Below are positions 15,543 through 62,238 of a stretch of DNA of 64,000 nucleotides, one piece after another (the first letter of the stretch is position 1; each line of letters starts with the position of its first letter). The DNA is taken from the sequence record ON287370.1; one strand, 5' to 3'. Made by a program: the position numbers and the translations under genes. Under the pieces are notes generated by a model. It was not told where the DNA came from. It searched no databases and worked only from the letters and a program-made list of their open reading frames with translations.

Positions 15543-15562
15543 TACTAATAGGGCCAATAACC

Positions 15563-18500
15563 GTGAATAACAAACAGTCATCTGTAGTTCCATTCAAGGT
15601 TAGAAGCGCTCAAACTGGTACTGACATTACTGAGAATATCAAGTTAACGTCTGTTGAATCTAAGGGGACTTCGGTCCCCTTTTTCAAGGCTAATGACAAT
15701 GATACTTTTACAGTGATCAATGCTGATCAAAATGAAGACAAATTGATCGATGCAGTATTTAAGTTTGACGTAACTGACTTAAACAAGACCTACTCCCTGC
15801 AAGCAGAGAGTAAGGTCAATGTGAAGAAGTATGCACCTGGTACTTTTGAAGCAAAAGTACTTACTAATAATGGATTGTTCTTAAATGGTGTTGTAAAACA
15901 ACAGCGGTATTTTGATTACGTGGCTAAATACCAAGGACAGGAATTACCCAATACCGAATTTTTATTTTTATCAGGATCCAATGTATTTAACGGTTATGCT
16001 TCTTTTGATAAAGAAGAAAATCTTCCGGATGGTAAGACTAACCGTGTTTACTACACACCACTGTATGAAGCAAATGGTAACACGATAGACTTTAAAATAC
16101 TTCGCAAAAATGCTTCTGATAGTACGCTGGTAGGTGATGGTAATTGCATTGTCCCAATGAGGGCGATCTTTGCTAAAAACGCATCCGGATCATTAAACGC
16201 ATTTTTCCCTAACACTTCAGATGCTGGTGTGGTGGGACCTCTAAATGCGATTGTGAGAATTTATCCGATCGTTACTTGGAATGGGAATGTGGTTCCTCTT
16301 AATTCTCCGGCTCTAAAAATTGCTAAACTAGATAAAACAACAGTCACCCCAAATCAATCGGGCGCAAGTAAATTCGATATACTTGGGACAACTGAAACTT
16401 ATATCGAGTGCAAGATAACTTCCGTGGAACCAACTCCAGGTAGAAATCCTGGGTTTACATGGAGACTTACGTATGGAAATGTCGACTTAGATTTAAATGG
16501 GTCCAATGTTTTACTTAAAGATGGTATTCTTGACCCCATAGAACTAACCAATCTAAAGCCCTTAAATCCGAATGCCCTGCAAAAATTAACATTCACTGCG
16601 TCTTTATCTAAAACTGCAGAATGGTCGGCATTTTTATCAGTTAGTGGTGCCGTCTTTGCTTCAGGTAGTTTGATTATACGCAGTAAAAATAATTCAGCTA
16701 TTATCTCCAGTGCCGATATCAGTGGGCTCACCCCTGACCAAGTGGGTCGATATATAAAGGAACTAACGACACCGGGGGTTGAATCAATTGTAACTGTATC
16801 TGGGGTAATGGACTGTTACCGCATCCGTGGTTCAGAAAACATGGCTGGTACAACACCCATGGCAATCAAACCTTTGGTCATTGAAATCGCTGAAGGTAAG
16901 TATATTTCTTATGCGATGCCGGCTGAGAAGCTGAATAATACTGGCGATAACTACGTCATCATTGGTATTAAAGAAGAGAACCAAGATAAGTTCTCTGGTG
17001 CTTCTGTAACTAACTTCAAAGCGACCGGTGCTCTTGATAAAGCTTCAGCTCCTAGTCTGAATGCTGATGGTAGTTTTGCCATCAACATCATGGGTAATAA
17101 AAATAACGGTGAGGTTTTAGTTACTGCTGATATCGTTGGCCCTGCGCCTGAAGGTAGAACTTACAAATATAGTAAGACCTTGATGGTTAGTGGTAATGAC
17201 CAAGTTGTTATTACACCTAAAACGGTACCTGTTAAAGTCTGGGATAGCCTAAGTGAAGTTCCATTTACTGTAACTTCTAGCGGTACTGATGTTACTTCTC
17301 AGATTCGTAATCTGAAATTGGTAGCTAACGAATATATCAAAGAAGATCCTGAAAATCCTGGACATTGGGTTGTTGATACAGCCCCTACAGCAGGTGCTTC
17401 TAAATCAACCTTCTTTACATTTGAAGTTAATGTAACGGGTAACTGGAAACCTAAAGTGGCTTATGGTATTTATCAGATCGCTGCTTGGTCTGGTAAAGTT
17501 CTAGAGGTTGAATCTGATGGGATCATAGGGGCCAGCAAATTAAAAGAGACCAGTTACGTAGTTAAACCCAAATATAAGAAAGAACCAATTGCTGATAAAA
17601 TAGAAATTGTTCTTCCTAGTAATGCTGGGTTCACAGTAGTTAAAACAACACCTTCAGAAGACAATACTGAACTTACAGTAACCGTTAAGGCGACTACCAC
17701 CACGGGTAGTAAAGATGTTTATAACTCAATTACCGTCATTAAAGGTATTGGTTATAAACTTAAAAATAGCCAGGGGACTACTGAAAATGTAGATATTGTA
17801 CATCTAGATAGTAAATTATTCTCCAATGAAGACTATTTGGCACTTTATGGTAGCATAGAAAAAGTTGGTGGTCCATATGGGGCTTTAGGTGCATTTGCCG
17901 CTACGTCGGGAGTATCTGAAATTTATGTCTTTATTAATGGTGATAGAATATCCCTAAATGACTATAAATTATCAGCTTATTTCTTAGATAATGGTGCTAA
18001 CATTACTAGTCCATCCATTAAAGCTAATGCGTTTAGTTATATAGGAGGGGAGGACACGACCCTATATGTTAGAATAACTAAACCAAAATTGAACATTACT
18101 GATACGGCTCACCAATATTATTCACCATGGGCGATGATATATGGTGATGGTGGGGTAAATGATCAATATAAATGCGTAACCAAAAATAACTTTTGGGTTA
18201 ACCCGACTACCACAACAGAAACTCCTTTACTAACTTTACATGAACCTAGTGAAGTAAAGCCAGGAGTAGAAAATATTATCAGGTGTAGAGTTTCTAACAG
18301 TGGTACGCTATTAGAAAATATGAACCTAGTAACGGGTAAATTGGTCCCTATCCCTGAAAATTGTATCGATCTTACCAAAGAGTACTCCATCTCTCTTGAC
18401 CCCAATGACAGTAAATACTTGATTATTAAGTTTACTGCAGGAACTATTGGTGGTAATGTCTATGTCAGGGGTGGTGTAAGTGCTAGTGGTGTTTCGGGCA

Positions 18501-20197: not shown

Positions 20198-20212
20198 GGA
20201 ATAGTCCTAACC

Positions 20213-23200
20213 ATGAGCACGCTTAAACAAGCTGCACAAGTGGATGGTCAGACTATCAGTAACCTTGATCCTGATATGGTAATCACACTGGACTCTCATG
20301 AGGGAGTCCAGATTTCCTCCAAGACGGAAGATACCATAACTTATAAATTCCTTAAGGAAGTTGATCAAGATACTGAATATAAACTGAACCTGACATTTGT
20401 TTATAAAGATCAGTATAAGACGGTCGTTCCGATGACCTTCCTCAATAAGAAACCTCAGCCTAAGTTTAATCTTAATGCTGAGTGGATCACCAAGGATGAA
20501 GAATTAGTGGGCGCAAGTTCCAATCGCATTTACTTTAAAGTAACTGATGATCAGGGAGTGCCTGTAGAGGGAGTTACGTTAAAAAATCTTAAGGCAGTTG
20601 GAAGTCCAAATACTCCAGATTTAGTTCCGGGGTATAGCGGGATAATTGTAGATACCAAGCCAGATGGGATTTATGCGATTAATATTAATTTAGGGCATTT
20701 ATCCGGTTCATTTAATATTGATATGGTATTATCTAAGGATGGCTTTGATTTTGTAATTCCTAAAAAGAATTACAAAGCTCCAGGCACCCCAGGTAAATTC
20801 ACCTTTACTCCTAACAAGGTATTTGCTACAGATGGTCCAACAGAAATAGAAATATTTGGAACGCAAGATAAATATGCTAGACCGAATTCTCCTCTGCAAG
20901 GAACCTTTGCTAAATTAGAGATTAGTGGTGGTATGGTTGCCGATCTTTCAGGAAAGGTGACTTTAGATGCGGATGGTAAAGGTAAAATAACCATTATTCC
21001 AAATGGTAAATTGGAAGATATTAATATCTATGGGAGTTTCTCTGCCACTCCAGATAACAGACTTTTAAGTGTGGACCATGATATTATTGTAGAGAAGGAT
21101 GCCTTAACTGTTGAGTTATTGACAGATGAAGATCTAGGTTATCTGAAGAAAGCAACTGTTGTTGCTCACGTTCTAAACTCTAAAGGCGAATATCTCCATC
21201 AACCTGGTAAGATCGTAAACTCTACAATAACTTCTGTACCGACTAACGATGTTGTTAGTAATGTTCCTGGTGAATTTACCCAGGGTACCGCAGATACATC
21301 TATTTATACCATGATCGTTGATGTTGGTTATCTCCCAGGTACAGTTACTATTATTCCTGAGCTAACTATCGCTGGTGTTAAATACGATATTGATTCCAAA
21401 CTGGAATTCAAGACAGAAGGTTCTCCAGTTACAGTAAGTAGAGTTGGAGCGGTAATAGATCCGTTCAAGTCTACCATGATGGGAATTTTCTTCACCAGAC
21501 AAGTTAGGATTGATGGTGAGACCTCAATTTCATTTGGTACTACAGTAGTTTCTCAAAAATCAAGTGATGGCTTGAAGATCGATAGACCATACACCTTCTT
21601 AGGTAAAGGTAACGCAACCGGGTATATTTCATCTGAACAACCTAATACTACGCAAACACTCACCTTTAGCGTTTCTGAGGAAATACAGGGTATCCTTTAT
21701 ACCTATGATGACTTAGTGCTTGAAGTGACTGTACGTGATGGTGTCAAGGAAGAGGTTACCGCCACACCTAAAGCAGACCTGGAGATAATGCAGGTTGATC
21801 CTGAGAATACTAATAGAGATCTTCCGTGCTATCTTGAATTTAAACTCGATAATAATGTTAAAGGTCCAGTGACCGATGCAGAACTTGTTTCTGTTAAAAC
21901 CACTAATGTTCCTGAAACAGGATCCGGTATCTTCAGCGTGGGTGAATCTCTGACCAAGGTTGCTGATAACATCTACAGACTAGATATCAAATGTGATAAA
22001 GGTATTGACTCGGCTCTGTTTGATTTAGTGATCAAATCTGGTGAGAAAGAGTTCACTGTTAAGCAATTTAGTGTTAACATCATCAAGCCGCCATTAAGGT
22101 TAGAAGAGTTAGTCCCTATTAGTATGCTTCCACAAGGGGGTAGCGAGGTTGACTTTAAGTTCTCCTTGATGCAGGCAAGCTGGACTGGATTGGGAACTAA
22201 TAACCCGGTTCTCATCTATAATAGTAAATTACAATTTACTTATGATGATTTCACCATATCTGATAATGCCGAATTTGTTAATGAACCAGCTCAGGCGGAT
22301 AAGAACCCTACCATGACAGTCTTTAAACTTAAGTCTAAAGCTGCCGATGGAACAGTTAAGATTACTGGTACGGTTAATGCAGTTAATTCTAAGCTGGGTA
22401 AACAGGGTACTCTTGAAATCAGTCTCCCTATTGGGATAGGGAAGGAATTAACATTAGTTCCAGTTAGTGATCCTATTCTAACACAGGGTGATAACAAAGT
22501 AGTATTTGATCTCAATTACGCTGACGGTGCTCCTGCAACTGGCCTCACCTGTTATTATTATGATTTCTCTGATGGTGAAAAACGCAATAATGGTTATACT
22601 GGTTATTCTCATCTCAAAGAAGATAAAGATAAACCAGGTCGTTACGAGTCCAATATCGCAGTGGGTTGGGCGCAAGCTACATTCACGCCTATTTGGTATA
22701 TGGATGTTGATGGGTTAAGTAGCAAAGTTGTTAGTCAACCATTAACCACTCAAGGTACTGAACCAGAAGTAGTTCAGACTGATAATACCATCACTAATGA
22801 TGATAAACAGTACACTACTTACTTCCAACTAGAAGTTCCGCTAGTTCCAGGACCTCAAAAATATATTCCTGCTGGTAAATGTGAATTAATATCTGTTGAT
22901 AATTCGCTTACTATAATTGGGTCGATTACTCGTGAACCAAGCAATGGTCGTTTCATTATTAAGTGCGAACCTAAAGGTGAAACCGGGATTGCTAATATCA
23001 AAGTCAAGTTTACTTGTACTGAGTTCATGACGACCTATGTGAAAGAAATCGATCTTGTTGTCAATATTAATCCACCGACGCCAGTTCTAACTGATCTTGT
23101 AACGGAATATACTTTTGATCTGTGGGAAGAGAAAGAACTTTCCTATGATGTGAAGAGTGGCGATGTAAGTGTGGCTTCCAGTGTGACTGATATTGTCTGT

Positions 23201-23428
23201 ACTAATAACGATGATATCAAAGATGATTTTGAATTCAGTAAAAATGCTAATGGCAAGTGGGTATTCAAATCTATTAAATCGGATACCTCAGATGTTATCT
23301 CCAAGAAAGCAGAACTGAAATTCATTGTTGTTTATGCCGGAATAACCACCGAACTAACGGCTGAAGTTCAACTGTCTACCAATGTAAATGCAAACCCTAA
23401 ACCAGAGTTTGATGTTGAAATAATCTAA
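20213..23428 (+). CDS. 1,071-aa Ig-like (invasin/Big_1-like) virion protein
   Basis: Repeated V-x-D-x-x-G-x-P-V-x-G ... G-x-Y motifs, plus a C-terminal copy of the shared module (LWEEKELSY...GKWVF). Confidence 0.65.
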   Translation: MSTLKQAAQVDGQTISNLDPDMVITLDSHEGVQISSKTEDTITYKFLKEVDQDTEYKLNLTFVYKDQYKTVVPMTFLNKKPQPKFNLNAEWITKDEELVGASSNRIYFKVTDDQGVPVEGVTLKNLKAVGSPNTPDLVPGYSGIIVDTKPDGIYAININLGHLSGSFNIDMVLSKDGFDFVIPKKNYKAPGTPGKFTFTPNKVFATDGPTEIEIFGTQDKYARPNSPLQGTFAKLEISGGMVADLSGKVTLDADGKGKITIIPNGKLEDINIYGSFSATPDNRLLSVDHDIIVEKDALTVELLTDEDLGYLKKATVVAHVLNSKGEYLHQPGKIVNSTITSVPTNDVVSNVPGEFTQGTADTSIYTMIVDVGYLPGTVTIIPELTIAGVKYDIDSKLEFKTEGSPVTVSRVGAVIDPFKSTMMGIFFTRQVRIDGETSISFGTTVVSQKSSDGLKIDRPYTFLGKGNATGYISSEQPNTTQTLTFSVSEEIQGILYTYDDLVLEVTVRDGVKEEVTATPKADLEIMQVDPENTNRDLPCYLEFKLDNNVKGPVTDAELVSVKTTNVPETGSGIFSVGESLTKVADNIYRLDIKCDKGIDSALFDLVIKSGEKEFTVKQFSVNIIKPPLRLEELVPISMLPQGGSEVDFKFSLMQASWTGLGTNNPVLIYNSKLQFTYDDFTISDNAEFVNEPAQADKNPTMTVFKLKSKAADGTVKITGTVNAVNSKLGKQGTLEISLPIGIGKELTLVPVSDPILTQGDNKVVFDLNYADGAPATGLTCYYYDFSDGEKRNNGYTGYSHLKEDKDKPGRYESNIAVGWAQATFTPIWYMDVDGLSSKVVSQPLTTQGTEPEVVQTDNTITNDDKQYTTYFQLEVPLVPGPQKYIPAGKCELISVDNSLTIIGSITREPSNGRFIIKCEPKGETGIANIKVKFTCTEFMTTYVKEIDLVVNINPPTPVLTDLVTEYTFDLWEEKELSYDVKSGDVSVASSVTDIVCTNNDDIKDDFEFSKNANGKWVFKSIKSDTSDVISKKAELKFIVVYAGITTELTAEVQLSTNVNANPKPEFDVEII

Positions 23429-51505: not shown

Positions 51506-52483
51506 ATGAATGTATTAGAATGCCTGGGTGTCGGCATTGTTGCGATGGATAAGGAAACTAATACCGATGAGATTCAAGTTTATATCCCATCAATGTTTCC
51601 TGAGGGTGACGGTGAAGTCACGACTCAAACCGAAACACAAACTGTAACAACCAAGACACCTACAGGAGATACCAGCTCCAGTACTACTTTAAGTTCTAAC
51701 ACAGTACCAGCAACTTGGATGCCAATTAACACCAACCGAGTGACTGCTCCTGATGTTCGAAATGGTAGTAAAGTAGTTGTCTATAAGTTTGTAGGACAAT
51801 CTAAATACCGTTGGACCTATTTTGGTATGGATGGTACCTTACGTCTTGAAACTGTAATCTATGCGTTCTCATCCTCTCCTAATGTTGATGCTAATGCTCC
51901 GGTAACACCGGATAACTATTACATATTCATGATATCTTCCCATAAAAAAATGATCCAGTTAGTTACTGGTCAGGGGAATGGAGAACCAACCTCTTATTGT
52001 CTATCTCTTGATACTGGCAATGGTCAATTCGGTATAGTTGATGGTGAGAATAACATTCTCTCTATTAACTCCATGGATCACGCTTTCTCATTTATCAATG
52101 AAGAGAAATCATTCCTAAATATCGAAAAGAAAAACATCACCATGTCTTGTGAAGATAGGATGTTGTTGAAAGGTAAGAACAATATCGATCTTCAGTGTAA
52201 AGAGCTTAAACTGAAAGCTGATGAAAGCATCAGTTTTGATACCAAGAAAACAACTTGGCTTTCCCCTGACATTTACATCAAAGGCAATATAGTTCACGAA
52301 GGTAATTATAACCAGAGCGGTAATTATACCCTTGAAGGTAATGCAGCTATTCAAGGTGGCTTTAGCCAGTTTGGTGGTAAAGGTGAAGTTGGTGGCGGTT
52401 GGACTATTGATGGTGTTAACTATCTTGGTCACAAACATTCTGCCGTTAAATCTGGCGGCGATACCTCAGGTCCTGTTGCATAA
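51506..52483 (+). CDS. Baseplate central spike / gpV-like protein
   Basis: OB-like N-terminus (W-x-P...TAPDVRNG), a beta-helical Gly-rich C-terminal part, and terminal HKH-x4-SGGDTSGP, the iron-binding H-x-H tip of P2 gpV-type spikes. Confidence 0.8.
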   Translation: MNVLECLGVGIVAMDKETNTDEIQVYIPSMFPEGDGEVTTQTETQTVTTKTPTGDTSSSTTLSSNTVPATWMPINTNRVTAPDVRNGSKVVVYKFVGQSKYRWTYFGMDGTLRLETVIYAFSSSPNVDANAPVTPDNYYIFMISSHKKMIQLVTGQGNGEPTSYCLSLDTGNGQFGIVDGENNILSINSMDHAFSFINEEKSFLNIEKKNITMSCEDRMLLKGKNNIDLQCKELKLKADESISFDTKKTTWLSPDIYIKGNIVHEGNYNQSGNYTLEGNAAIQGGFSQFGGKGEVGGGWTIDGVNYLGHKHSAVKSGGDTSGPVA

Positions 52484-52495
52484 AACAAACATAAC

Positions 52496-52523
52496 CCCTA
52501 CCCCTCCGAAAGGAAGGGTAGGG
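52496..52523. terminator. Bidirectional hairpin terminator between convergent genes
   Basis: CCCTACCCCTCC-GAAA-GGAAGGGTAGGG. Confidence 0.75.
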
Positions 52524-52532: not shown

Positions 52533-55500
52533 TTATAGTACAAAGTTAGGTTTTGGAGCAACCCAAGACGGAGTATTCGTGTCGAAGTTGGCGTGCTTGT
52601 TAACACGTTTCACATCCCACTTAGACAAGTCTTGGTTAAAGGACAACGCACCCATAAACATAGAAATCATGTCTGTGACAATACTCGTATCCCACGAACC
52701 GATTGGTTGGTTGAATTTAGCAGCGCCATTAAACATATCGTTCATGTTAACTGCTCGGCTAGTTTTCCAACTGGAGATATTCTTGTTAAAGGACACTGCA
52801 GATTTGAACATACCGGAGTAGTTGATACAGGTAGTTGTATCCCAGGTAGATAGATCAGCATCGAAAGCAGAGGCGTTATTAAACATGTCAGTGAATCTGA
52901 TCACATTCTTAACATTCCACCCGCCAATATCACCCTTGAAGTTAGTACAGTCCATGAACATTGAAGTCATGTCAGAAACCATACCAGTGTTCCAGTTACT
53001 AATGTCACCATTGAACATTGAACAACCTTTAAAAGCGCTAGTCATCAAGGTAACTTTAGATGTGTCCCATTTAGTCAGATTACAGTTGAAAGAAGGACAC
53101 CCTTCAAATGTACTAATCAAGTTAGTGATACGGTTAATCGTCCAGTTACTGATATCTGCTTCAAAAGCAGTACAATTCTGGAACATACCAGCGACACTAG
53201 TGAAATTCAACCCAGTCCATTTATCAAGACCAGTTCCTTTAAATACCGGACAGTCCTTAAACATTTTGGCTGTAAGGATGATACCATTCAGCCACTTGTT
53301 AAACTGCCATGTACTTAAATCTTGATTGAACTTAGTTGCACCTTCAAACATGGAACTAAAGTCTTCGCATTTCTCCCAGTTCAAATCTTTAACAGAACTG
53401 TTAAATGAGGTTGCACCATAGAACATGTTTTTGGCATATCTGACATTATTAACTTCCCACCCAGTGAGCGGTTGGTTAAACACGGTATTATTCTGGAACA
53501 TGCCTGTGAGATCGGCAGATAACCCCCAGGAACACCCTTCAACACTGGCATTGTATTTGCTTTCAGCAAACATTCTATTTGCTGCCCTAACAGATTTAGT
53601 ATTCCATTTACTAAGAGAGAACTTATTACCATTAGTGCCGAAAGCACCAGCTGTTTCAAACATGGAGTACATAGACGTGACAGAATCAGTGTTCCAAGCA
53701 GAAATATCAATATTGAATTTAGCTGCTTTCATAAATGCTTCAGACATGTCTACAATTTTAGATGTATCCCACATTGAAATATCTTGGTTGAAGACAATCG
53801 CAGCTCGGAACATGCCCTGGATGGTTTGGAGTGACTTAGTGTTCCATTTGTCAAACGGTTGGTTAAATACCGTAGTTTCGGAGAACATATAACGTGCGTA
53901 CAGGAGATTAGAGACATCCCAATCATTTACTGATTGGTTAAAGGCTTTACATGAAGTAAACATGTAAGCCATATTCTTAACTCTCGATACATTCCATTTA
54001 CCAATTGGCTGATTAAACAAGTTAGTATTCTTGAACGTACCTTCCATACTAATAACGTTAGATGTATCCCAATCAACAATGTCTGGATCATTGAAGTCTT
54101 TGGTAAATGCAAACATGTAGTTGAAGTCAATTCCATTTTTACCGGCTACACTATTGGCATCTGCAAACTTCCAACCTTTAACAGTAGAGTTGAATACCGA
54201 TGCATAGAACATAGTGTTAAAAGAAACACAACGAGTCCAAGTGATATTCGGCATTGGTTGATTAAAACCTTTGGCCTGTTGGAACATACCTGTTGCGTAT
54301 TTGATATTTTCAAAGTTCCAGTTGGTAAGTGGTTGGTTAAATGTAGGGGTACCTGAGAACATCCTAGTACAATCTACATCTACCGCCAATACCCAGTTAT
54401 CAACCTTAGCATTAAAGTTGGAGTCTTCGAACATCCCCCTCAGATTAACACAACTAGTTAGTTTCCAATTACTCAGATCTCCACTAGTCATGAATACCTT
54501 GGTCGCCGAGAACATGTCTTCAGCATTAGTAAGATGAGTAACCACCCACTTGGGAACACCTTTACCTGTGAATGCCTGAGCGTTCTTAAACATACCGGAA
54601 ACATCAGTGATCGTAGCCGTCAACCAGTTACTCATATCCCCATCAAACGCCGTTGTCCCTTTGAACATTTTAGATGCGCTTTGAAGACTGTTTGGTGAGT
54701 TGTTGCTAAAGTTCTGATTAAAGGCAAGTGCGCCTTCAAACATGGATTCCATGGTCAAGACTTTGTGGTAATTCCAATTACCGATTGGTTGGTTAAACTT
54801 CTTAGTCCCCATGAACATTTCTTTCATGGATTTGACGTTATTAACATCCCAGTTACTAATATCGACATTGAAGTTCGCAGCATTCTTGAATGTACCTTCC
54901 ATGCTACCGATGTTGGAAGTATCCCACTTCTCAATCCCTTTGTAAGTGGTACCGATTGCTCCTTCGAAAGTCCCATCCAGATCAAGAATATTCCCAGGTA
55001 ATTCTGCGGTAATAGTGAAATCAGTTGATCCTTTAAAATTCAACTTATTCACACTAGACCCTATCTCAACCAACTCAACCAGACCTTTACCCCATTTCAA
55101 CTCCAGGAGTCCAGAGATCTCTAAGGTTACGATACCAGTATAGGAACTAGGGATGTTGTAAACACCAGTTCCATTTGGCTGAACAGCTTGACCATTGATC
55201 TTGATAGCATTAGAACCAGACAGTGGAACAGCTCGACCTTGAGCGGTATCCCATTTAAGCGTTGTCCCTTTGATATTCAAGAAGAAGCGGTTGATAGGTT
55301 TGCCCTCACCATAGATACCCATAAAGGCGGGGAAGGATGACCCATAACCATAATAGTTCATTCGCAGACTATCGATGACCGGAAGTAGGGCATTACGCCA
55401 ACCTTCTTGATCATAGTGAGTGAACGTACTATCTTTCAAGAATCCGCACGGAACAACACCAGCATTCGGTTCAGTCTCGTAATTGTTAGGATTATATTTC

Positions 55501-58430
55501 CTTCCATACAACTCAAGAACAGTACCATTCTGTCTAATAAAGAGTTCATCAGAATCAGGATATAACTTATCCGATGCATCAACAGGGATCTTAACTAAAC
55601 TGTTACCACCACCAATGGTCACTAATGAACCCATTGGGTAAATATTGGTCCCTTCAATGGCATTCATCAACCCACCGTTAACAAGCGTGGTTTTTGCTGA
55701 CATAGAAAATACACCATAAATCCCAGGAGTCTTACGATAACTCCACATGGATTTTTTCAACATCACAGGAGACTGGAAGTTGACGTGCATGTGATGGGGG
55801 ACTAGGGTTTTATATGCGGATACTGCTTCATAGTCCACATTATAACCGACGGCTGAGTCATAAGGGAATACTGGATCAATAGCACCTGGATCAGGTTGAA
55901 GTGTAGTGGTACCTTGACCGGCATCAACTACTAACTCAAACTCAAAGTAGAAGTTATTATGAGGAGCCAAGTTAACCATTAACTTATATTTAGAAACGTT
56001 GCCATTACGATTCATCAACATCAAGTAGGTGTCGGTTGATTCGAAACGGTCACGACCAAATACACTTGTCCAATCTGCAGTGGCTGATCTCTTATTATTT
56101 ACCTTGAGTGGTTTAGCTGTAACTTGATCTTTCAAGTTCCCATTGATCTTGATAGTTCTAGCCCCATCGGTCACATCAATATACGCCCCACTAATCCAAC
56201 CGTAATAACAGTCGATATTGTCAGCAGGCCATTCAGGTATGGATAAACACTGAGAGAAGAAATACAGTCGGTTTTGGAAGTAGAACATCTGACGATGATT
56301 CTTAGTCCAGCCACCACCAAGTGTAGCGATATAAGAAAGAATCTGATCATCAATTTCTACCGGGTCCACACCTTTAACTGTTCCTTGACTATCGGCGGTA
56401 TCAAAACTAAATTTAGCATAACCTTTAAACTCATTCTGGGTATTGAATACTAAACAACTTGTATCAAAGTCAGATGAGTTCTCCTCATTTACGATCAAGA
56501 AGTCGGGTATGCGAGTGTAGTTAGGGTTCATCCAGGTTAAGGTATTACGCCAAGGACCATAAGCGTGATCACCACTACTGTACATAACTGGTTTATTATC
56601 GAGGTTAGCGTTACAAATACCCCAGCGATAAGTATTAGACCAGTCACGAGTTAAGGTGAGATAGTTTACAGTTCCGTTTTCCACATTAAGTGGGATATGG
56701 CGTAAATGGTCACCGTACAATCCATCTTGGTTCAGTGTGGAGATTTGACCATAGTTATACTTGATAAGCTTAGGTTTAATCTCATCACCGTTAGCAATCC
56801 ACTCTTTAGTATCGCCAACGTTATGTTGATAATAACCAACATACTGACGGTTATAATAAGTATACGTCTTGATATGGCCACCCTGAGATTCAAAGATCCC
56901 ATTAAAAACTAGAGGGTGGAATACATCATTAGTTACATCTGAAGTATACTCAATAAAGCGACCAGTAGGTTTAACCTGATAGTTGTCATCAAGAGTTTGG
57001 ATATTACTATCAATATCTCTTAATGAATCAATCGTAACAGTTGCTGTTTTACCGTCACCAACTTCTTTGGACTTAAATGACAAATCCATGTAGTAGTTGA
57101 TATAGTGTTTCTTATCCTTGGTGTAGAAACCGATCGGGATACGAATAGCAAACTCACCTTTCAAACGGTTGAGCCAGGTAAATGCAACGTGTTTGGCATG
57201 AGAGTGGTTAAAGTTATTCCAGAAACCATCTAACTGCGCTTGGGTGAAATTGAGGATACTTTTGATATCCAAGCAAACACCTTTAACGCCAGTATTAGGA
57301 CGGTTATAAATCTTGAACTTATTGTTCCCAATCTGCCAGTTAATGGTGGTGTACTTATCACCTAACGTCGCAACTGTTTCCGATGGGTTACCAGGACCGT
57401 CTTTTGCAGCGGTACCGTGTTCAACAAAACTATACAGATCAAGATCAATAGCCAAATAAACACTATCACCAGAACCTAAGTTACCACGTTGGATGGTAAC
57501 AATTGGGTTATAGATCGTAGACTCACGAGATTCAACAATACCTTCCCAGTTCTTAGCAAATACCCCAGCATTATCAAGGATATCGAACGGAAGTCTGATT
57601 TTGTTAAAAGCCCTGACTTTAACCGACTGATCTTCAACATAGTAGACACAGTGACGGTCAAATAAGTGAGGTGAACCTCTGAGCAGTTGGTTATTTGGTT
57701 CGATATTAGATTCAGCACGTAAGACACCAGGACGGGTTCTACGTAAATCTAAGGTGCTATTATAAACACGAACATCTGTCCCGCCCCAAGGCGTTACAGC
57801 TCGTCTAGCACGGCCTGTATCAGGTTTTCCCTGTGTCAGGATATCAGAACCATTCATGGCTGGATATAAACGCACACCCTGGTCAGTAGAGAACTGCCAA
57901 GGAGTCTCAGTGTAATAGTTCATCGCTGGTTTTGGTGACTCTACTACTTCACCTTCTTTCCAGTTAAATGGCCATTGCGGGATATTACCTAATTGACCAC
58001 CGGATGCGATTGGCATTAGTCGAGACCTGATATAGTTATCTGGATCTATCGACATGTACTTTCTAACAAGTGCTGCTAAACCAAGTGGGTTACAGAAGGT
58101 ATCCTGGGACTCACCATCCAAGTGTTCTTGAGGTGTAGCCATTTTCCAGTTTTCTTTTTTATCTAAACCCACTGTAGCTTTAGTTTCGCCATGCACCGCA
58201 CCTTGACGGTCGGTGTGTGCTTTGATTGCGTTTGTCGCATCCTGTTGAAAGCCATCAATGACTTTATCGGCATCTTGCAGTGCTTCAGTTACACGTCTTT
58301 CGAATTCAGCTGCATCACCTGTACTTACAGCCTTTGCATTGCCGATTTCAATGATTGCTTCTAAGACGGAACCGAGTGTATCGACCTTAGCACCAGCGGG
58401 CGGTAAGGGCTTGTCCGGATCTACAAACAT
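52533..58430 (-). CDS. Tail fibre-like protein with C-terminal BspA/DUF285 repeat solenoid
   Basis: The N-terminal motif AHTDRQGAVHGETKATVGL resembles phage fibre anchors. The last ~800 aa are ~25-aa W[DN]xSxVxxMxxMFxxAxxFNQxIxx repeats. Confidence 0.8.
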   Translation of the reverse strand: MFVDPDKPLPPAGAKVDTLGSVLEAIIEIGNAKAVSTGDAAEFERRVTEALQDADKVIDGFQQDATNAIKAHTDRQGAVHGETKATVGLDKKENWKMATPQEHLDGESQDTFCNPLGLAALVRKYMSIDPDNYIRSRLMPIASGGQLGNIPQWPFNWKEGEVVESPKPAMNYYTETPWQFSTDQGVRLYPAMNGSDILTQGKPDTGRARRAVTPWGGTDVRVYNSTLDLRRTRPGVLRAESNIEPNNQLLRGSPHLFDRHCVYYVEDQSVKVRAFNKIRLPFDILDNAGVFAKNWEGIVESRESTIYNPIVTIQRGNLGSGDSVYLAIDLDLYSFVEHGTAAKDGPGNPSETVATLGDKYTTINWQIGNNKFKIYNRPNTGVKGVCLDIKSILNFTQAQLDGFWNNFNHSHAKHVAFTWLNRLKGEFAIRIPIGFYTKDKKHYINYYMDLSFKSKEVGDGKTATVTIDSLRDIDSNIQTLDDNYQVKPTGRFIEYTSDVTNDVFHPLVFNGIFESQGGHIKTYTYYNRQYVGYYQHNVGDTKEWIANGDEIKPKLIKYNYGQISTLNQDGLYGDHLRHIPLNVENGTVNYLTLTRDWSNTYRWGICNANLDNKPVMYSSGDHAYGPWRNTLTWMNPNYTRIPDFLIVNEENSSDFDTSCLVFNTQNEFKGYAKFSFDTADSQGTVKGVDPVEIDDQILSYIATLGGGWTKNHRQMFYFQNRLYFFSQCLSIPEWPADNIDCYYGWISGAYIDVTDGARTIKINGNLKDQVTAKPLKVNNKRSATADWTSVFGRDRFESTDTYLMLMNRNGNVSKYKLMVNLAPHNNFYFEFELVVDAGQGTTTLQPDPGAIDPVFPYDSAVGYNVDYEAVSAYKTLVPHHMHVNFQSPVMLKKSMWSYRKTPGIYGVFSMSAKTTLVNGGLMNAIEGTNIYPMGSLVTIGGGNSLVKIPVDASDKLYPDSDELFIRQNGTVLELYGRKYNPNNYETEPNAGVVPCGFLKDSTFTHYDQEGWRNALLPVIDSLRMNYYGYGSSFPAFMGIYGEGKPINRFFLNIKGTTLKWDTAQGRAVPLSGSNAIKINGQAVQPNGTGVYNIPSSYTGIVTLEISGLLELKWGKGLVELVEIGSSVNKLNFKGSTDFTITAELPGNILDLDGTFEGAIGTTYKGIEKWDTSNIGSMEGTFKNAANFNVDISNWDVNNVKSMKEMFMGTKKFNQPIGNWNYHKVLTMESMFEGALAFNQNFSNNSPNSLQSASKMFKGTTAFDGDMSNWLTATITDVSGMFKNAQAFTGKGVPKWVVTHLTNAEDMFSATKVFMTSGDLSNWKLTSCVNLRGMFEDSNFNAKVDNWVLAVDVDCTRMFSGTPTFNQPLTNWNFENIKYATGMFQQAKGFNQPMPNITWTRCVSFNTMFYASVFNSTVKGWKFADANSVAGKNGIDFNYMFAFTKDFNDPDIVDWDTSNVISMEGTFKNTNLFNQPIGKWNVSRVKNMAYMFTSCKAFNQSVNDWDVSNLLYARYMFSETTVFNQPFDKWNTKSLQTIQGMFRAAIVFNQDISMWDTSKIVDMSEAFMKAAKFNIDISAWNTDSVTSMYSMFETAGAFGTNGNKFSLSKWNTKSVRAANRMFAESKYNASVEGCSWGLSADLTGMFQNNTVFNQPLTGWEVNNVRYAKNMFYGATSFNSSVKDLNWEKCEDFSSMFEGATKFNQDLSTWQFNKWLNGIILTAKMFKDCPVFKGTGLDKWTGLNFTSVAGMFQNCTAFEADISNWTINRITNLISTFEGCPSFNCNLTKWDTSKVTLMTSAFKGCSMFNGDISNWNTGMVSDMTSMFMDCTNFKGDIGGWNVKNVIRFTDMFNNASAFDADLSTWDTTTCINYSGMFKSAVSFNKNISSWKTSRAVNMNDMFNGAAKFNQPIGSWDTSIVTDMISMFMGALSFNQDLSKWDVKRVNKHANFDTNTPSWVAPKPNFVL
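52560..54990 (-). repeat. About 31 protein-level BspA/DUF285 (bacterial surface protein 26-residue) repeats
   Basis: Counted by eye from KWDTSNIGSM to KWDVKRV. The repeats are degenerate at DNA level. Confidence 0.85.
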
Positions 58431-58450
58431 GAAAATCTCCTAAAGAAGAA

Positions 58451-58468
58451 AGGGGAGTTTCCTCCCCT
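58451..58468 (-). terminator. GAAA-tetraloop hairpin
   Basis: The - strand reads AGGGGAG-GAAA-CTCCCCT, followed by TTCTTCTTT. Confidence 0.7.
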
Positions 58469-58473: not shown

Positions 58474-61400
58474 TTAACCAGTATACAGTTCGCTACGTTT
58501 CAGGAATCGGTAAGTACCTTTATCCGTTATAGCTCCAGAAGATACTGGAATGCCCGTATCACGCTGACGTGTTAGCGGGTAACCACTAATTGTGAAACTC
58601 TGATAACGTTGGATTGTAACAATACCGAAGTCATCTGTCTTGATAGTTGCAACCAAAATAGCGGATGGGTTATGGTGCCTTAATACTTTTGAAACATCGT
58701 ACTTAGCACTAGAACCATCAGCCACACAGTAAAGATAGAATGTTGAATTACGATAGACATCAGTAAGATCTCTCAAGTCCCAGTTAGTCATTTTAGCAGG
58801 CATCGAGTAACCATTGAAGGTCACACTAATATCCGCGTTAATGAATACTGACCAGTTCCCTTCAACATAGGTTGCACCTAACATGACGTATTTATCAACT
58901 ACTACTGGCAACGTTCCTTCAGGTCCTGTCCATGGTTTCATCAAGTCCATTGCGCCACCTGATTCAGCAGCTGGAACACCCTGTAGCCATCCCCATTGAG
59001 GGTTAGCCTGAACTTGCCAACCATATTCGTTAAATGACTGACCAGCACCAGTAGACGAGGTAGCCTCAACAGTTTGGTTGTTACGGACACGCAAGAATAT
59101 ACGTTGAGTGGTAGCGTTACCTGTGGTCTTAACTTGGATGCCTGTGAACCAACATTGTTCCATATTCCTTGGACCTTCTTCTGGATAATCCAGAATTTCC
59201 ATATGCGGATAACAAATGTTGATAGCATAACGATAATCCAATCCAGCCCAAGTACCATCTGGATTAGTTTGATGCTCGTTATACGAGATAACATTCTCAG
59301 GGTTTTGTGAAGGAGGAACTAGACGTTGCTTAGAGTAGTTAGCACCACTAAATGGATAATCAATGGCACCCATCTTCATTACACGAATTCCGTCAGCACC
59401 AACCGAAGCGACATCCCAATTAAATCTACCAATGATCGATCTGGTTAAAGTAGGGTTGTCAGTGATATGATAAATAATGGAGAACATGCAATAAGGTTGG
59501 TCGCTATTAATCCCTGGGTCTTGACAGACGTAGAAACTAATACCCATATCAATGGTTTTAGTGTAGTGACTCTCTAATGCTGTTTTAATCACACCTTCCC
59601 AGATCGTTTTAGGAATTCTGAGTTTTTCAGCATTAATTGGTTTAGCAAAAATTACTTTGGACAATGGCTCCATCGTGAAATTAAGATTGAGGTTTACGAT
59701 AATGCTACCATCATTTTCCTGTTGAATTTGTTTTATGCTACCATCGTCGTAAGTCTTATTACTAAACTGATATGGTGCACCAGGATTTTTAATGATATTT
59801 TTACGCAAGTACCCAAATACCCCAACTTCCCTACTTTTCACATCTTTCTTCTTTGGTCTATTTACAGTAGAAATGTCATACCGTATACCAACAACAGAAC
59901 CAAAGTTAGAGTTAGTCTTACGACCGTAGAGCGGCATTGGAATATATTCAGATTGGAGCGAATCACGTTTATCGTAATTATCCCCTTCCCCACCTTCAGT
60001 AATTCGATAGAAACAAGCAGTATTCTGATCCTCAGTTTCTGCCTGGAAGATTTCAATTGGGCTTTGTCTGATCTTACCATCTAAACGATATAAGTCAGCA
60101 TAGAACCGAGGGAATCCAGAAACCCCAAATGGAGATCTTAAAACCATTTGGTTCCACCAACCATTCTGTTGCCCAGAAGGTGTTGTCCAGTTGGCCGGCT
60201 GACCCATGTACTCAAAATCACGTTGTGGATCACCATCACGATTGTATTGAGTAGATGTCGCCATCAAGGGAGGTGTCCCTGTTTGACGAGAGCCAATTGT
60301 TATGAATCCAAAACCAGGGACATAACTACCAGCATTCATGGAGAACGATTGAGAGTGGTATCTTTGCTCATTATCACCGTTACACCATTCTAACCAACTT
60401 TTAGAAGGATTGATCATTTGGTCTTTTTGGACATCATAGTTCCCTAATTCCCAATGAGGTCCTAAGGTCCAAGTATTGGTTTCACCGTCCCATTCATAAT
60501 CTAGTACTAGGTTAACCCAGCCAGCTGAAGATGAATTGGCAGTCTGTTTAGTGGCGTAAGAGATCGTGAGTATTCTAACCCTTGAAATATTCGGGTTATT
60601 CGGGTTATTCACTACGATGTATTGACGACGGCGATGCGATTCTGCTGTATTAACTGGTGGATTAAAGTTGACTAGTCCTCTAGTTATCTCACCATTAGTA
60701 TTTTCAGCATAATCGATCATTACCATGGATAACCCAGTTTTACGAGTCCTTATTTGTGTATCATAAGTAACATTAACTGGTTGGAATTTAATCGTGTCAA
60801 CATCGTTATTAGAAAGATCCGAATATTTGACTCTGAAGAATCTCTGTTGGAAGTTTGTTCTACCCACGCCAGCAGGTGGGGTGAACCCCTCTGTCGTGTT
60901 GTAAGAAACAATTAGATAGACCCATTGTCCCACATGAGCGATGGTTGTATAACCAGGAGCAGGCGACCCACCATCTGGACCAATTAGTTCATTAAAGTTA
61001 GTCGGTTTAAACTCGTGACTATTAGGATCAAAAGTAGAGTTAGATGGACTAATATAAAACTTCTCGGTAGGTAAGACTGGTGAACCAGGGTCATTGGAGT
61101 CACCCATCATGATGATGTCGTTATTAGAACCATTGATTACATAGTTAGGTTGTTTACCATCAGCAGTAATTCTCGGATGCTGGTATTGAACGTAAGTATG
61201 TAGCCAGGGAACTAACTTCTCATCACGATTTTTCACATCTGTCTTATAGATGTAGTAAAGGTTCTTTACACGACCATCAAAGGCACGGAGCAATCCGATA
61301 GTCCAACCGTTACCTTCCTGACAGAATGCTGAGTTCTCATAGTCACCACCCAAACCTTCAAAGGAACCAGTAATCGGTGGTGGAATGTAAATCCCAGAAC

Positions 61401-62238
61401 CAAAGTAACCAAATGGTAACTCAGACTGAATAATAAAATCTTCAGTATCTGGGGCTAGTTCTTCAGTTAGACGTTGGAGACCTGCTGGTGTGGAAAACAG
61501 ATCATTACGTAAAGCATCGGCATCCTGTTGAGGGGTAGCTGTGGCGCAGTTAGGAACATTGCCTAAATCTACATCACTTGGTTTCAAGTGGTGTGGGTTC
61601 TTATAGTTTCGGCTATGATCCATGATTGCGCCCCAGAGGAGTTTTTGAACATAGTTCAATTTAGCCCAAACTTCTTTCTGGAGTTCTTCTAACAGTTCTC
61701 TTACTCTAGTACCATCATTCTTGGCTCGGTAAGTGAACATGCTAAACAGTTCAACAAGACCACCAAACCCAACTAGTTCATTAGGGTTTTTGATATCATG
61801 AGAGTGCCATGCAGGGTAATAGGTTTTAGGTTTATTATTGATCTGAGTTTCCCAGTCAATAGGTTTACCTTCGATGACCATTTGTTCCAACATGTCCAGT
61901 AAGGTCTTAACAGAGATTACTGGTTTACCTACTCGCTGATAGACAAGATTAACTTTACCACCAGTTGCTAGGACATGGTCTTTTAATTCGACATAAAGGT
62001 AAACAGGTTTACCAGTAAGTTCTGAAAGTTTAGGCACACCCGTTGAAGGTTCCCAATCCTTTCCTCTTACTAAATCAATCCCACCTCTGATTACACGAAG
62101 AGTGTTGTCCCCATACATCGGGCCTTCTTCTGGTACAATCCAAGGTGCTGAAATCTTAGCAAGATCTACAATGTCTTCTTTCTTAAACTCTGCTTTCTTA
62201 GCCGAGTAATCAATATCGACAATATCTAAATCTTTCAT
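58474..62238 (-). CDS. Tail fibre / baseplate-associated virion protein
   Basis: Motif HSRNYKNPHHLKPSDVDLGNVPN is typical of phiKZ-like fibre proteins. Its C-terminal domain is paralogous to that of the next gene. Confidence 0.7.
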   Translation of the reverse strand: MKDLDIVDIDYSAKKAEFKKEDIVDLAKISAPWIVPEEGPMYGDNTLRVIRGGIDLVRGKDWEPSTGVPKLSELTGKPVYLYVELKDHVLATGGKVNLVYQRVGKPVISVKTLLDMLEQMVIEGKPIDWETQINNKPKTYYPAWHSHDIKNPNELVGFGGLVELFSMFTYRAKNDGTRVRELLEELQKEVWAKLNYVQKLLWGAIMDHSRNYKNPHHLKPSDVDLGNVPNCATATPQQDADALRNDLFSTPAGLQRLTEELAPDTEDFIIQSELPFGYFGSGIYIPPPITGSFEGLGGDYENSAFCQEGNGWTIGLLRAFDGRVKNLYYIYKTDVKNRDEKLVPWLHTYVQYQHPRITADGKQPNYVINGSNNDIIMMGDSNDPGSPVLPTEKFYISPSNSTFDPNSHEFKPTNFNELIGPDGGSPAPGYTTIAHVGQWVYLIVSYNTTEGFTPPAGVGRTNFQQRFFRVKYSDLSNNDVDTIKFQPVNVTYDTQIRTRKTGLSMVMIDYAENTNGEITRGLVNFNPPVNTAESHRRRQYIVVNNPNNPNISRVRILTISYATKQTANSSSAGWVNLVLDYEWDGETNTWTLGPHWELGNYDVQKDQMINPSKSWLEWCNGDNEQRYHSQSFSMNAGSYVPGFGFITIGSRQTGTPPLMATSTQYNRDGDPQRDFEYMGQPANWTTPSGQQNGWWNQMVLRSPFGVSGFPRFYADLYRLDGKIRQSPIEIFQAETEDQNTACFYRITEGGEGDNYDKRDSLQSEYIPMPLYGRKTNSNFGSVVGIRYDISTVNRPKKKDVKSREVGVFGYLRKNIIKNPGAPYQFSNKTYDDGSIKQIQQENDGSIIVNLNLNFTMEPLSKVIFAKPINAEKLRIPKTIWEGVIKTALESHYTKTIDMGISFYVCQDPGINSDQPYCMFSIIYHITDNPTLTRSIIGRFNWDVASVGADGIRVMKMGAIDYPFSGANYSKQRLVPPSQNPENVISYNEHQTNPDGTWAGLDYRYAINICYPHMEILDYPEEGPRNMEQCWFTGIQVKTTGNATTQRIFLRVRNNQTVEATSSTGAGQSFNEYGWQVQANPQWGWLQGVPAAESGGAMDLMKPWTGPEGTLPVVVDKYVMLGATYVEGNWSVFINADISVTFNGYSMPAKMTNWDLRDLTDVYRNSTFYLYCVADGSSAKYDVSKVLRHHNPSAILVATIKTDDFGIVTIQRYQSFTISGYPLTRQRDTGIPVSSGAITDKGTYRFLKRSELYTG

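What the first reader, a model, noticed from the sequence alone, without database searches (positions are those of the whole stretch)
52533..55320. Tail fibre tipped with a ~31-repeat BspA/DUF285 solenoid
Seen: about 800 aa of 25-aa repeats with an N-cap region and a C-cap (WDVKRV...SWVAPKPNF), appended after a fibre body. The exposed positions vary strongly between repeats. Established: DUF285/BspA-type repeats form LRR-like solenoids on the surface proteins of Mollicutes, Bacteroidetes, Listeria and others, usually as protein-binding adhesins. Inference: a long curved solenoid used as a phage receptor-binding or host-surface-binding tip, unlike the usual trimeric beta-helix, and tunable by repeat gain or loss.
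Basis: partly seen in the sequence, partly recalled or inferred. Interest (0 to 1): 0.65.

Follow-up and report, generated by a model that had tools for sequence, protein, structure and literature searches.

The report
Jumbo-phage tail protein with DUF285 solenoid
A 1965-residue gene in the tail-fibre cluster of Serratia jumbo phage Sureiya ends in 31 DUF285 (leucine-rich-repeat-like) repeats; this design is old and shared by dozens of related phages, and close relatives have swapped a block of about 12 repeats, which fits an untested host-binding role.

Summary
ORF 52533-58430 (minus strand, 1965 aa) is SUREIYA_02010 of Serratia phage vB_SmaM-Sureiya. It ends in exactly 31 DUF285/PARCEL repeats (residues 1153-1945; Pfam E 1e-202) plus a conserved C-cap. 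AlphaFold2 models this part as an LRR-type solenoid (pLDDT 93.8).

The "tail fibre" reading is partly supported.
- Residues 18-143 carry the helix-plus-motif neck of the phiKZ gp131 fibre family.
- The gene sits with three gp131-like paralogs, a gp130 homolog and the gp164-like spike.
- Residues 150-1050 are a globular beta-rich body, not a fibrous shaft.
- Presence in virions and receptor binding are untested.

The solenoid is an optional, old add-on joined at about residue 1050. Orthologs carry 0 to about 56 repeats. Yubaba lacks exactly two repeats. No bacterial protein exceeds about 37% identity.

The sharpest result is a replaced block at residues ~1241-1547 (window 53789-54708). It differs in otherwise 97-99% identical phages from five public runs. 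The replacing allele matches that of a more distant relative.

The scan found the same architecture before on other DNA (N1M2, OBP, pEt-SU and Aeromonas phages). Verdict: a new member of a known kind, of moderate interest.

The parts
52533..58430 (-). Whole gene SUREIYA_02010, 1965 aa, annotated 'hypothetical protein'
   Evidence: dN/dS is 0.03-0.10 in all measurable segments, so it is a maintained coding gene.
57981..58430 (-). Neck module, residues 1-150. It has long helices (18-35 and 40-73) followed by the conserved H..HGETK.TVGL....NW tail-fibre motif. It lacks the ~155-aa N-terminal globular domain that the gp131-like paralogs have.
   Evidence: tblastn to phiKZ gp131 residues 193-270: 42% identity, E 1e-8. 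hhalign to the 02020 family: residues 18-143 against 157-278, probability 96.4%. The motif recurs in over 100 tail or tail-fibre PHROG proteins. AF2 confidence is low here, as expected for an oligomerising segment.
55281..57980 (-). Globular beta-rich body, residues ~151-1050 (phrog_17273). It appears to hold two propeller-like modules, ~173-567 and ~571-915.
   Evidence: AF2 pLDDT is mostly above 90. Foldseek matches DDB1, GH74 and Utp tandem propellers at E 1e-6 to 1e-7, but VIA Z is only 5-6.7, so the propeller reading is weak. BFVD matches 'virion structural proteins' of many jumbo phages. No Pfam or PDB relative by sequence.
54975..55280 (-). Junction and N-cap, residues ~1051-1152: small beta domains that lead into the solenoid. 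The add-on module begins here.
   Evidence: P0056 is homologous only up to ~1050. Body-only orthologs end at 1047-1059. AF2 secondary structure.
52596..54974 (-). 31 DUF285/PARCEL repeats, residues 1153-1945, predicted to form an LRR-type solenoid
   Evidence: AF2 pLDDT 93.8, pTM 0.79. VIA Z is 23.4 to Leptospira LRR protein 4u08, about 20 to SHOC2, and 18.0 to the Eubacterium ventriosum LRR protein 4h09.
53789..54708 (-). Exchangeable block, residues ~1241-1547 (repeats ~4-16, the irregular ones). At least three allele types exist among close relatives.
   Evidence: P0002 and locus L007 are 96-100% identical in nucleotides outside the block and 40-79% inside it. The P0002 block is 82% identical to that of P0006 but 59% to Sureiya's. 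Contigs from four further runs of four studies replace 711 nt with 738 nt at this exact place.
53850..53999 (-). Two repeats (residues 1478-1527) that are absent from Yubaba. The deletion is in register, between two FNQP..KW motifs.
   Evidence: with the repeat register.
52533..52595 (-). C-terminal cap (residues 1946-1965) and stop codon
   Evidence: Conserved in all DUF285-bearing homologs.
52496..52523 (.). 12-bp GC-rich hairpin between the convergent genes 02010 and 02000; a likely bidirectional terminator
58437..58440 (-). GGAG ribosome-binding site, with 6 nt between it and the ATG. A small hairpin (58451-58468) lies between 02020 and 02010.
58474..62238 (-). Upstream paralog SUREIYA_02020 (1254 aa): gp131-like N-domain plus neck and a large body. 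It is probably a partner in the same fibre complex.
51506..52483 (+). SUREIYA_02000, homolog of the phiKZ gp164 central baseplate spike
   Evidence: tblastn E 2e-27. phrog_3216. Role of gp164 from PMC13250141.

Best explanation
SUREIYA_02010 is most likely a component of the peripheral baseplate fibres of a phiKZ-related jumbo myovirus.

Anchoring. Its first ~150 residues carry a long helix plus the conserved HG.TK..VGL...N motif. These match the part of the phiKZ gp131 family that, in phiKZ, builds the helical bundle docked under gp130. They probably anchor the protein beside its three neighbouring paralogs (02020, 02030 and 02040).

Arm. From that anchor hangs a self-folding arm. It consists of a ~900-residue globular beta-rich body followed, from about residue 1050, by an optional add-on: a 31-turn LRR-type DUF285 solenoid. 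By inference from a typical LRR pitch of ~0.5 nm per turn, the solenoid is roughly 15 nm long.

Function. The solenoid most likely binds a host-surface structure and helps adsorption. Specificity probably lies mainly in the irregular repeats 4-16, which related phages exchange as a block by homologous recombination.

Shown versus inferred. Shown here: the repeats, the predicted fold, the neck homology, the synteny, purifying selection, repeat-number variation and the block exchange. Inferred: virion location, oligomeric state and binding.
For: - Repeats and fold.
- Neck homology to phiKZ gp131 and to the Sureiya paralogs. The same motif recurs in more than 100 proteins that hit PHROG tail, tail-fibre and tail-collar-fibre families.
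- Gene order. The minus-strand genes run 02040, 02030, 02020, 02010, then a terminator. The gp130 homolog 02050 and the gp164-like spike 02000 flank them.
- phiKZ cryo-EM places the gp131-like N-terminal regions and a six-helix bundle under gp130 as the fibre base (PMC13250141).
- The architecture is conserved in 59 of 62 homologs, including OBP, N1M2, pEt-SU, AH04, Kc263 and Aeromonas phages.
- dN/dS is 0.03-0.10.
- Pattern typical of a receptor-binding module. The N-terminus and body are conserved while the distal module is replaceable. P0056 carries a different C-terminus after ~1050. P0258 has none, in the same synteny.
- Block exchange inside the solenoid on a near-identical backbone.
- Between Sureiya and Yubaba, 02010 and 02020 are the diverged genes among neighbours that are 98-100% identical.
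Against: - There is no proteomic or imaging evidence that the protein is in virions.
- The ortholog OBP_145 is labelled 'hypothetical' while its neighbours are labelled (putative) virion structural proteins. The OBP proteome paper could not be read.
- The N1M2 paper reports that no tail fibres were visible by EM.
- The protein lacks the N-terminal globular domain that the phiKZ atlas fits into the fibre base.
- Body-only orthologs exist, so the solenoid is not required for the protein's basic role.
- Sureiya and Yubaba were isolated on the same host strain although this gene differs between them.
- The C-terminal half of 02020 is even more diverged between those two phages, so 02020 may be the main specificity determinant.
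- The complex prediction could not be run.
Confidence: 0.6

Rival explanations
1. The protein is in the virion, but its solenoid is an accessory adhesin and not the receptor-binding protein that decides infection. It might give reversible first contact with LPS, flagella, biofilm matrix or environmental surfaces. The decisive specificity would lie in 02020, 02030 or another fibre.
For: Body-only orthologs occur in the same locus, and repeat number ranges from 0 to ~56 without loss of the gene. The C-terminal half of 02020 is the most diverged stretch between Sureiya and Yubaba, at 63-87% nucleotide identity. Sureiya also encodes giant Ig-like fibre proteins elsewhere in the window.
Against: Strong purifying selection acts along the whole solenoid. 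Sharply bounded allele exchange of the kind found here is typical of specificity determinants.
Confidence: 0.22
2. The protein is a structural or scaffolding part of the large baseplate periphery. In this reading the solenoid binds other phage proteins (LRRs are general protein-protein interaction modules) and not the host.
For: The phiKZ baseplate periphery uses many large, otherwise unassigned proteins. LRR folds commonly bind proteins (established knowledge). The two ends of the solenoid are well conserved between relatives.
Against: A partner inside the virion would constrain the sequence. Yet a 300-residue block is freely exchanged between alleles only 57-60% identical. Repeat number also varies about six-fold, and the module can be missing altogether.
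Confidence: 0.1
3. The protein is not packaged. It would act inside or on the infected cell, for example in superinfection exclusion or lysis timing, or as a released decoy.
For: OBP_145 is not labelled as a virion protein. There is no direct virion evidence for any ortholog in the papers that could be read.
Against: The tail-fibre-type neck, its position as the last gene of a fibre-gene operon, and the absence of any lipoprotein-family membership (NF045896 scores below its cut-off). A 1965-aa protein with a virion-anchoring motif is an unlikely intracellular factor.
Confidence: 0.06

Closest known systems
[quoted passage not shown]
   Same: Same neck, same ~1050-aa body, same junction, same DUF285 solenoid and C-cap, and same gene neighbourhood.
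   Different: The Sureiya/N1M2 group has ~31 repeats where most others have ~20. The family range is 0 to ~56. Sureiya carries block allele A, while near-identical phages in public runs carry allele B.
phiKZ gp131-family fibre proteins (gp131, gp133-135), which form the hetero-hexameric fibre base under gp130 (PMC13250141)
   Same: The helix plus conserved motif region is shared: P0001 residues 80-154 match gp131 residues 193-270 at 42% identity. The gene is also adjacent to gp131-like paralogs and to a gp130 homolog.
   Different: P0001 lacks the ~155-aa N-terminal globular domain. Its body shows no profile-level homology to the paralogs beyond the neck. gp131 ends in a single seven-bladed propeller, whereas this protein adds a ~900-aa body and a solenoid.
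PARCEL / DUF285 / TIGR02167 repeat surface proteins of Mollicutes, Bacteroidota, Listeria and marine microbes (Roske et al. 2010, PMC2996958)
   Same: A 25-aa amphipathic repeat with variable hydrophilic positions, scoring above the Pfam and TIGRFAM thresholds. The opposite strand is poor in stop codons, as that paper notes for many PARCEL tracts.
   Different: This protein has no lipoprotein or T9SS sorting context. It scores below the cut-off for the Mbov_0838 lipoprotein family. The best bacterial identities are only ~30-37%. No DNA dyad symmetry was found at the settings used. Here the repeat is fused to a phage tail-fibre neck.
Classical LRR solenoids (Leptospira LIC11098 4u08, SHOC2, TLRs, plant LRR receptor kinases; Eubacterium ventriosum LRR protein 4h09)
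   Same: Predicted fold: VIA Z 18-23 over 325-470 aligned residues, and Foldseek probability about 1.0.
   Different: Sequence identity is 6-10% and TM-scores are low because curvature and twist differ. No sequence relative of DUF285 has a solved structure.
Trimeric beta-helix tailspikes and T4-type long tail fibres
   Same: Same logic: a conserved virion-proximal anchor with an exchangeable distal module.
   Different: The distal parts here fold confidently as a single chain, and no beta-helix or triple-stranded fibre fold was matched.

Membership tests
DUF285 (PF03382) / PARCEL repeat (TIGR02167) | Score above the curated HMM thresholds | tested here: met
   PF03382 scores 661 bits against a cut-off of 25. 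TIGR02167 scores 82.7 bits against 30.
DUF285 (PF03382) / PARCEL repeat (TIGR02167) | Tandem ~25-aa amphipathic units with a conserved hydrophobic core and variable hydrophilic positions | tested here: met
   31 units with core positions M3, F4, F10, N11, I14 and W17; the remaining positions have high entropy.
DUF285 (PF03382) / PARCEL repeat (TIGR02167) | Palindromic coding DNA or open frames on the opposite strand | tested here: inconclusive
   Two antisense frames have 15 stops in 827 codons, against 42-95 stops in ~1139 codons over the body. No inverted repeat of 16 nt or more was found.
Mbov_0838-type PARCEL surface lipoproteins (NF045896) | Score above the curated cut-off | tested here: not met
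   475 bits against a cut-off of 500. The match comes from the repeats only.
BspA proper (Tannerella BspA, Pfam LRR_5) | LRR_5-type repeats detectable by Pfam | tested here: not met
   DUF285 is the only Pfam family at E <= 0.01. 'BspA family' is a naming convention of the databases.
LRR-fold solenoids | Right-handed solenoid of short strand-plus-loop units, structurally alignable with solved LRR proteins | tested here: met
   AF2 pLDDT 93.8. VIA Z 23.4, rmsd 4.9 A, 371 residues aligned to 4u08. All the Foldseek matches listed are LRR proteins. This rests on a predicted structure only.
phiKZ gp131-like tail-fibre family | Helix plus conserved H..HG..K..VGL...N neck region | tested here: met
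   tblastn E 1e-8 to gp131. hhalign probability 96.4% to the 02020 family.
phiKZ gp131-like tail-fibre family | gp131-like N-terminal globular domain (the part fitted into the fibre base) | tested here: not met
   The homology starts at residue 157 of 02020 and at residue 18 of P0001, so P0001 has no equivalent of residues 1-155.
phiKZ gp131-like tail-fibre family | Encoded with the other fibre or baseplate-periphery genes | tested here: met
   The paralogs 02040, 02030 and 02020 lie directly upstream. The gp130 homolog 02050 and the gp164 homolog 02000 flank the cluster.
phiKZ gp131-like tail-fibre family | Present in the virion at the baseplate periphery | not testable with these tools
   No proteome or cryo-EM data exist for Sureiya or any ortholog in the papers that could be read.
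Phage receptor-binding proteins (functional class) | Conserved anchor with an exchangeable distal module, mosaic between close relatives | tested here: met
Phage receptor-binding proteins (functional class) | Binds a host receptor; needed for adsorption | not testable with these tools
   This needs an experiment.

The most novel reading that the evidence does not exclude
The DUF285 solenoid is a single-chain, LRR-type receptor-binding arm of a phage. Its host specificity would be reprogrammed by exchanging a ~12-repeat block inside the solenoid, instead of by swapping a trimeric tip domain. If so, it would be the first functionally defined role for DUF285/PARCEL repeats, which have no solved structure, and a kind of phage receptor-binding module unlike the usual trimeric fibres and spikes.
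Probability: 0.4. Interest if true: 0.6.

Novelty: new member of a known kind. Interest (0 to 1): 0.4.

Why it matters
Receptor-binding proteins of phiKZ-related jumbo phages are poorly defined, and DUF285/PARCEL is a very large repeat family: more than 4000 hits at E <= 1e-10 in a single search. The family has no solved structure and no established function. This gene family offers a tractable case with a culturable phage and host. It also provides natural alleles that differ only in a 300-residue block on an otherwise identical backbone, natural length variants, and orthologs that lack the module altogether. If the solenoid binds the host, it shows a single-chain LRR arm used for phage adsorption and a ready-made exchange point for studying specificity. 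If it does not, the module is an ordinary accessory decoration. The architecture is already labelled in databases for sister phages, and this scan has already noted it in four relatives, so this particular gene adds little.

Tried and rejected
- Complex prediction was set up with the N-terminal parts of 02040, 02030 and 02020 plus P0001 residues 1-165. No oligomer or co-assembly test was therefore made.
- The OBP virion-proteome paper (J Virol 2012) is not held.
- The N1M2, ZPAH34, fENko-Kae01, RisingSun/Joad and jumbo-phage comparative papers say nothing about this protein.
- PCH45 receptor work is not transferable, because PCH45 was not among the 60 listed of 135 matching records.
- Sequence searches of the PDB with the protein and with a family profile found nothing.
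- The ESM Atlas gave no usable hit for the body.
- Pfam finds nothing in the body, in the paralogs, or in the alternative C-terminus of P0056.
- The propeller reading of the body rests on Foldseek E 1e-6 to 1e-7. VIA Z is only 5-6.7, below the tool's own reliability guide, so I keep it as tentative.
- A diversity-generating retroelement was rejected as the source of block variation. Synonymous sites are saturated across the whole block and its length changes, which is replacement and not adenine-directed mutagenesis.
- Positive selection by point mutation was rejected (dN/dS 0.03-0.10).
- Recent capture from a bacterium was rejected (best identity ~37%).
- Recent repeat amplification was rejected (DNA copies 60-77% alike; no TRF array).
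- The antisense ORFs over the repeats do not match the repeat HMM and are taken as a by-product of the repeat's codon pattern.
- Run metadata were coded, so habitats and hosts of the allele-B phages could not be named.
Full report
**Identity of the window.** The stretch 52533-58430 is 100% identical to Serratia phage vB_SmaM-Sureiya (ON287370). This is a 256-kb phage isolated from sewage on S. marcescens LVF3, and the record files it under Petsuvirus together with Pseudomonas phage OBP. The published description calls it a myovirus with a 128-nm head and a 202-nm tail, and says nothing about this gene (PMC10070969). The finding lies in the C-terminal half of one ORF, 52533-58430 on the minus strand. 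It encodes 1965 aa and is annotated SUREIYA_02010 'hypothetical protein'.

- Pfam DUF285 (PF03382) scores 661 bits, E 1.3e-202.
- NCBIfam TIGR02167, 'PARCEL repeat-containing surface protein', scores 82.7 bits against a cut-off of 30.
- An HMM built from the protein's own clean units finds 29 units. Two double-length segments add two more. That gives 31 units over residues 1153-1945, most of them exactly 25 aa long.
- Six positions form the conserved core (M3, F4, F10, N11, I14, W17). The others are variable within the protein, and they change about twice as often between orthologs.
- A C-terminal cap ending in PKPNF is present in every DUF285-bearing homolog.
- At the DNA level the units are only 60-77% alike, and Tandem Repeats Finder sees no array. 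The repeats are therefore old.

**Predicted structure of the C-terminal part.** An AlphaFold2 model of residues 1101-1965 was built with an alignment of 55 family members. It is very confident (mean pLDDT 93.8, pTM 0.79). All the Foldseek matches listed are long LRR solenoids such as TLRs, plant LRR receptor kinases and SHOC2, with probability about 1.0. VIA-align gives Z 23.4 (rmsd 4.9 A, 371 residues) to Leptospira LRR protein 4u08. It gives about 20 to SHOC2 and 18.0 to the Eubacterium ventriosum LRR protein 4h09. No solved structure is related by sequence to the repeats or to the rest of the protein. The LRR-type fold is thus a prediction, but a strong one.

**What precedes the solenoid.** It is not a fibrous shaft. 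In the model of residues 1-1150 (pLDDT 85.3), residues 1-140 have low confidence but contain long helices at 18-35 and 40-73. Residues 150-1140 form confident beta-rich globular domains. Foldseek places the body near proteins with tandem beta-propellers (DDB1, GH74, Utp) at E 1e-6 to 1e-7. VIA Z is only 5-6.7 for two segments, 173-567 and 571-915. 'Two propeller-like modules' is therefore tentative. In the viral model library the body resembles 'virion structural proteins' of many other jumbo phages, including Joad, CBB, SEGD1 and Kwan, and a pTD1 'minor tail protein'.

**Link to the tail.**
- Residues 80-154 match phiKZ gp131 residues 193-270 at 42% identity, E 1e-8 in a search of two phiKZ segments.
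- A profile-profile comparison aligns residues 18-143 with residues 157-278 of the neighbouring paralog family 02020, at probability 96.4%.
- The three upstream genes 02020 (1254 aa), 02030 (1238 aa) and 02040 (254 aa) all match the N-terminal regions of phiKZ gp131, gp132, gp133 and gp135.
- 02050 matches gp130, and the convergent downstream gene 02000 matches gp164.
[quoted passage not shown] In the same atlas gp164 is the central spike (PMC13250141).
- The motif after the helix (H..HGETK.TVGL....NW) recurs, often several times per protein, in more than 100 representatives. Those tested hit PHROG families named tail protein, tail fibre protein and tail collar fibre protein.
- One defining feature is missing. 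02010 has no counterpart of the ~155-aa globular N-domain of its paralogs.
- The gene has a GGAG ribosome-binding site. It is the last gene of the minus-strand run and is followed at once by a 12-bp GC-rich hairpin.

**Distribution.** A search with residues 1-1140 found 63 proteins (62 clearly homologous along the body). Of these, 59 carry DUF285. The body is constant at about 1165-1190 aa to the first repeat. The solenoid spans from about 9 to about 56 repeat lengths, with a mode near 20. The Sureiya/Yubaba/N1M2 group has about 31. An exhaustive search of 1.84 billion representatives found only about 19 clusters with the body. Several of them are body-only proteins ending at residues 1047-1059. 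One of these, P0258, lies on a 164-kb contig in the same gene order: paralogs, this gene, spike, SbcC, transglycosylase, ligase. P0056 keeps the body to ~1050 and then carries an unrelated 680-aa C-terminus with no Pfam match. With the solenoid alone as query, more than 4000 DUF285 proteins score E <= 1e-10. The best are only about 30-37% identical, and many of them carry the Por/T9SS sorting domain (PF18962). There is no sign of a recent donor.

**Variation between close relatives.**
- Yubaba, isolated on the same host strain, lacks exactly residues 1478-1527. That is two repeats, joined in register between two FNQP..KW motifs.
- P0002 comes from a public run (locus L007). It is 99.4% identical over the body and 99% over the last 415 residues, but only 59% identical over residues 1230-1550.
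- At the DNA level the surrounding 17 kb is 96-98.5% identical. Inside the block, identity falls to 40-79%.
- The P0002 block is 82% identical to that of P0006, a relative whose body is only 84% identical. N1M2 carries a third type.
- Contigs of up to 115 kb from four further runs of four studies were laid on the gene. They match at 97-99% except at window 53789-54708, where 711 nt are replaced by 738 nt.
- Nei-Gojobori dN/dS is 0.03-0.10 wherever synonymous sites are not saturated.

The pattern is replacement of a ~12-repeat block by recombination, on a protein under strong purifying selection. The exchanged block coincides with the irregular repeats that carry insertions. It lies in the first half of the solenoid, not at its tip. 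Between Sureiya and Yubaba the flanking genes are 98-100% identical in protein. By contrast, 02010 is 92.7% identical and 02020 is 87.5%. The C-terminal half of 02020 is only 63-87% identical in DNA. 02020 is therefore at least as good a candidate for a specificity determinant.

**Interpretation.** The best-supported reading (0.6) is a baseplate-peripheral fibre component. Its neck joins the gp131-like assembly, and its single-chain arm ends in an LRR-type solenoid that binds something on the host surface, with specificity mainly in the exchangeable block. The rivals are:
- an accessory adhesin, with the decisive receptor-binding protein elsewhere (0.22);
- a structural element of the baseplate periphery that binds phage proteins (0.10);
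- a non-virion function (0.06).

What weakens the main reading:
- No proteome or image shows the protein in virions.
- The OBP ortholog is labelled merely 'hypothetical' while its neighbours are labelled (putative) virion structural proteins.
- The N1M2 authors saw no tail fibres by EM.
- The gp131-type N-domain is missing.
- Body-only orthologs exist.

**Comparison with what is known.** The gene is a clear member of DUF285/PARCEL by score and repeat anatomy. It also shows the stop-poor opposite strand that Roske et al. mention for many PARCEL tracts (PMC2996958). It is not a member of the Mbov_0838 lipoprotein family (below cut-off). It is not a BspA/LRR_5 protein by Pfam; 'BspA family' is a label that databases already give to its orthologs in N1M2, pEt-SU, LAh10 and ZPAH34. 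None of the papers found and read describes a function for DUF285 in a phage. The Vibrio phage pir03 paper only lists such ORFs in a table.

**Earlier notes of this scan.** The scan's earlier notes describe the same architecture in N1M2, OBP, pEt-SU and an Aeromonas phage. For N1M2 they include a swap of about 12 repeats. I reached the same result independently on this genome, and I added the run-based evidence and the allele relationships.

**Verdict.** The feature is real. The fold prediction is strong and the tail-module assignment is good but indirect. The binding role is inferred. The item is a new member of a known kind, with moderate interest (0.4). The interest lies in the natural block alleles, which make a specificity test straightforward, and in the absence of any solved or functionally defined DUF285 domain.

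Noticed in passing
window 58474-62238 (SUREIYA_02020, minus strand): Between Sureiya and Yubaba, both isolated on the same host strain, the C-terminal half of this gp131-like paralog is only 63-87% identical in DNA. The flanks are 95-100% identical. It is a second mosaic hot spot and a candidate receptor-binding protein in its own right.
   Followed up: partly
window 52533-55013, plus strand (e.g. ORFs 52822-53325 and 53425-53892): Two frames antisense to the repeat region hold only 15 stops in 827 codons, against 42-95 stops in ~1139 codons opposite the body. This gives open frames of up to 167 aa. They do not match the repeat HMM. [quoted passage not shown]
   Followed up: partly
window 52496-52523: A 12-bp GC-rich hairpin lies exactly between the stop codons of the convergent genes 02010 and 02000. 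It is a likely bidirectional terminator.
   Followed up: no
window 51506-52483 (SUREIYA_02000, plus strand): This is a homolog of the phiKZ central spike gp164 (E 2e-27). It has a weak GpV 'Apex' motif match at its extreme C-terminus, at 16 bits and below the cut-off.
   Followed up: no
P0001 residues ~517-536 and 570-580 (window ~56691-56882): Stretches of the body are invariant or nearly so across 58 homologs down to 24% identity: GGH...YT.YNRQY..Y.H and G.YGDHLRHIP. They could mark a functional or metal-binding site in the first propeller-like module. No function was assigned.
   Followed up: no
L010:6001-9150 (ENA contig, 164 kb) and P0056: L010 holds an ortholog with no DUF285 module at all (1049 aa) in the same gene order. 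P0056 is another ortholog with an unrelated 680-aa C-terminus that has no Pfam match. What replaces the solenoid functionally is unknown.
   Followed up: partly
public runs X1-X13 (coded), laid on window 52533-58430: Sureiya-like phage contigs of up to 115 kb occur in runs of at least four studies filed under several organism labels. All four that were laid carry block allele B, not Sureiya's allele A. Names were coded, so sources could not be identified.
   Followed up: partly
window 5403-23428: Three consecutive giant ORFs of 3379, 1544 and 1071 aa lie on the plus strand. Other findings of this scan note them as Ig-like fibre proteins. They mean this phage has further candidate host-binding structures.
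   Followed up: no
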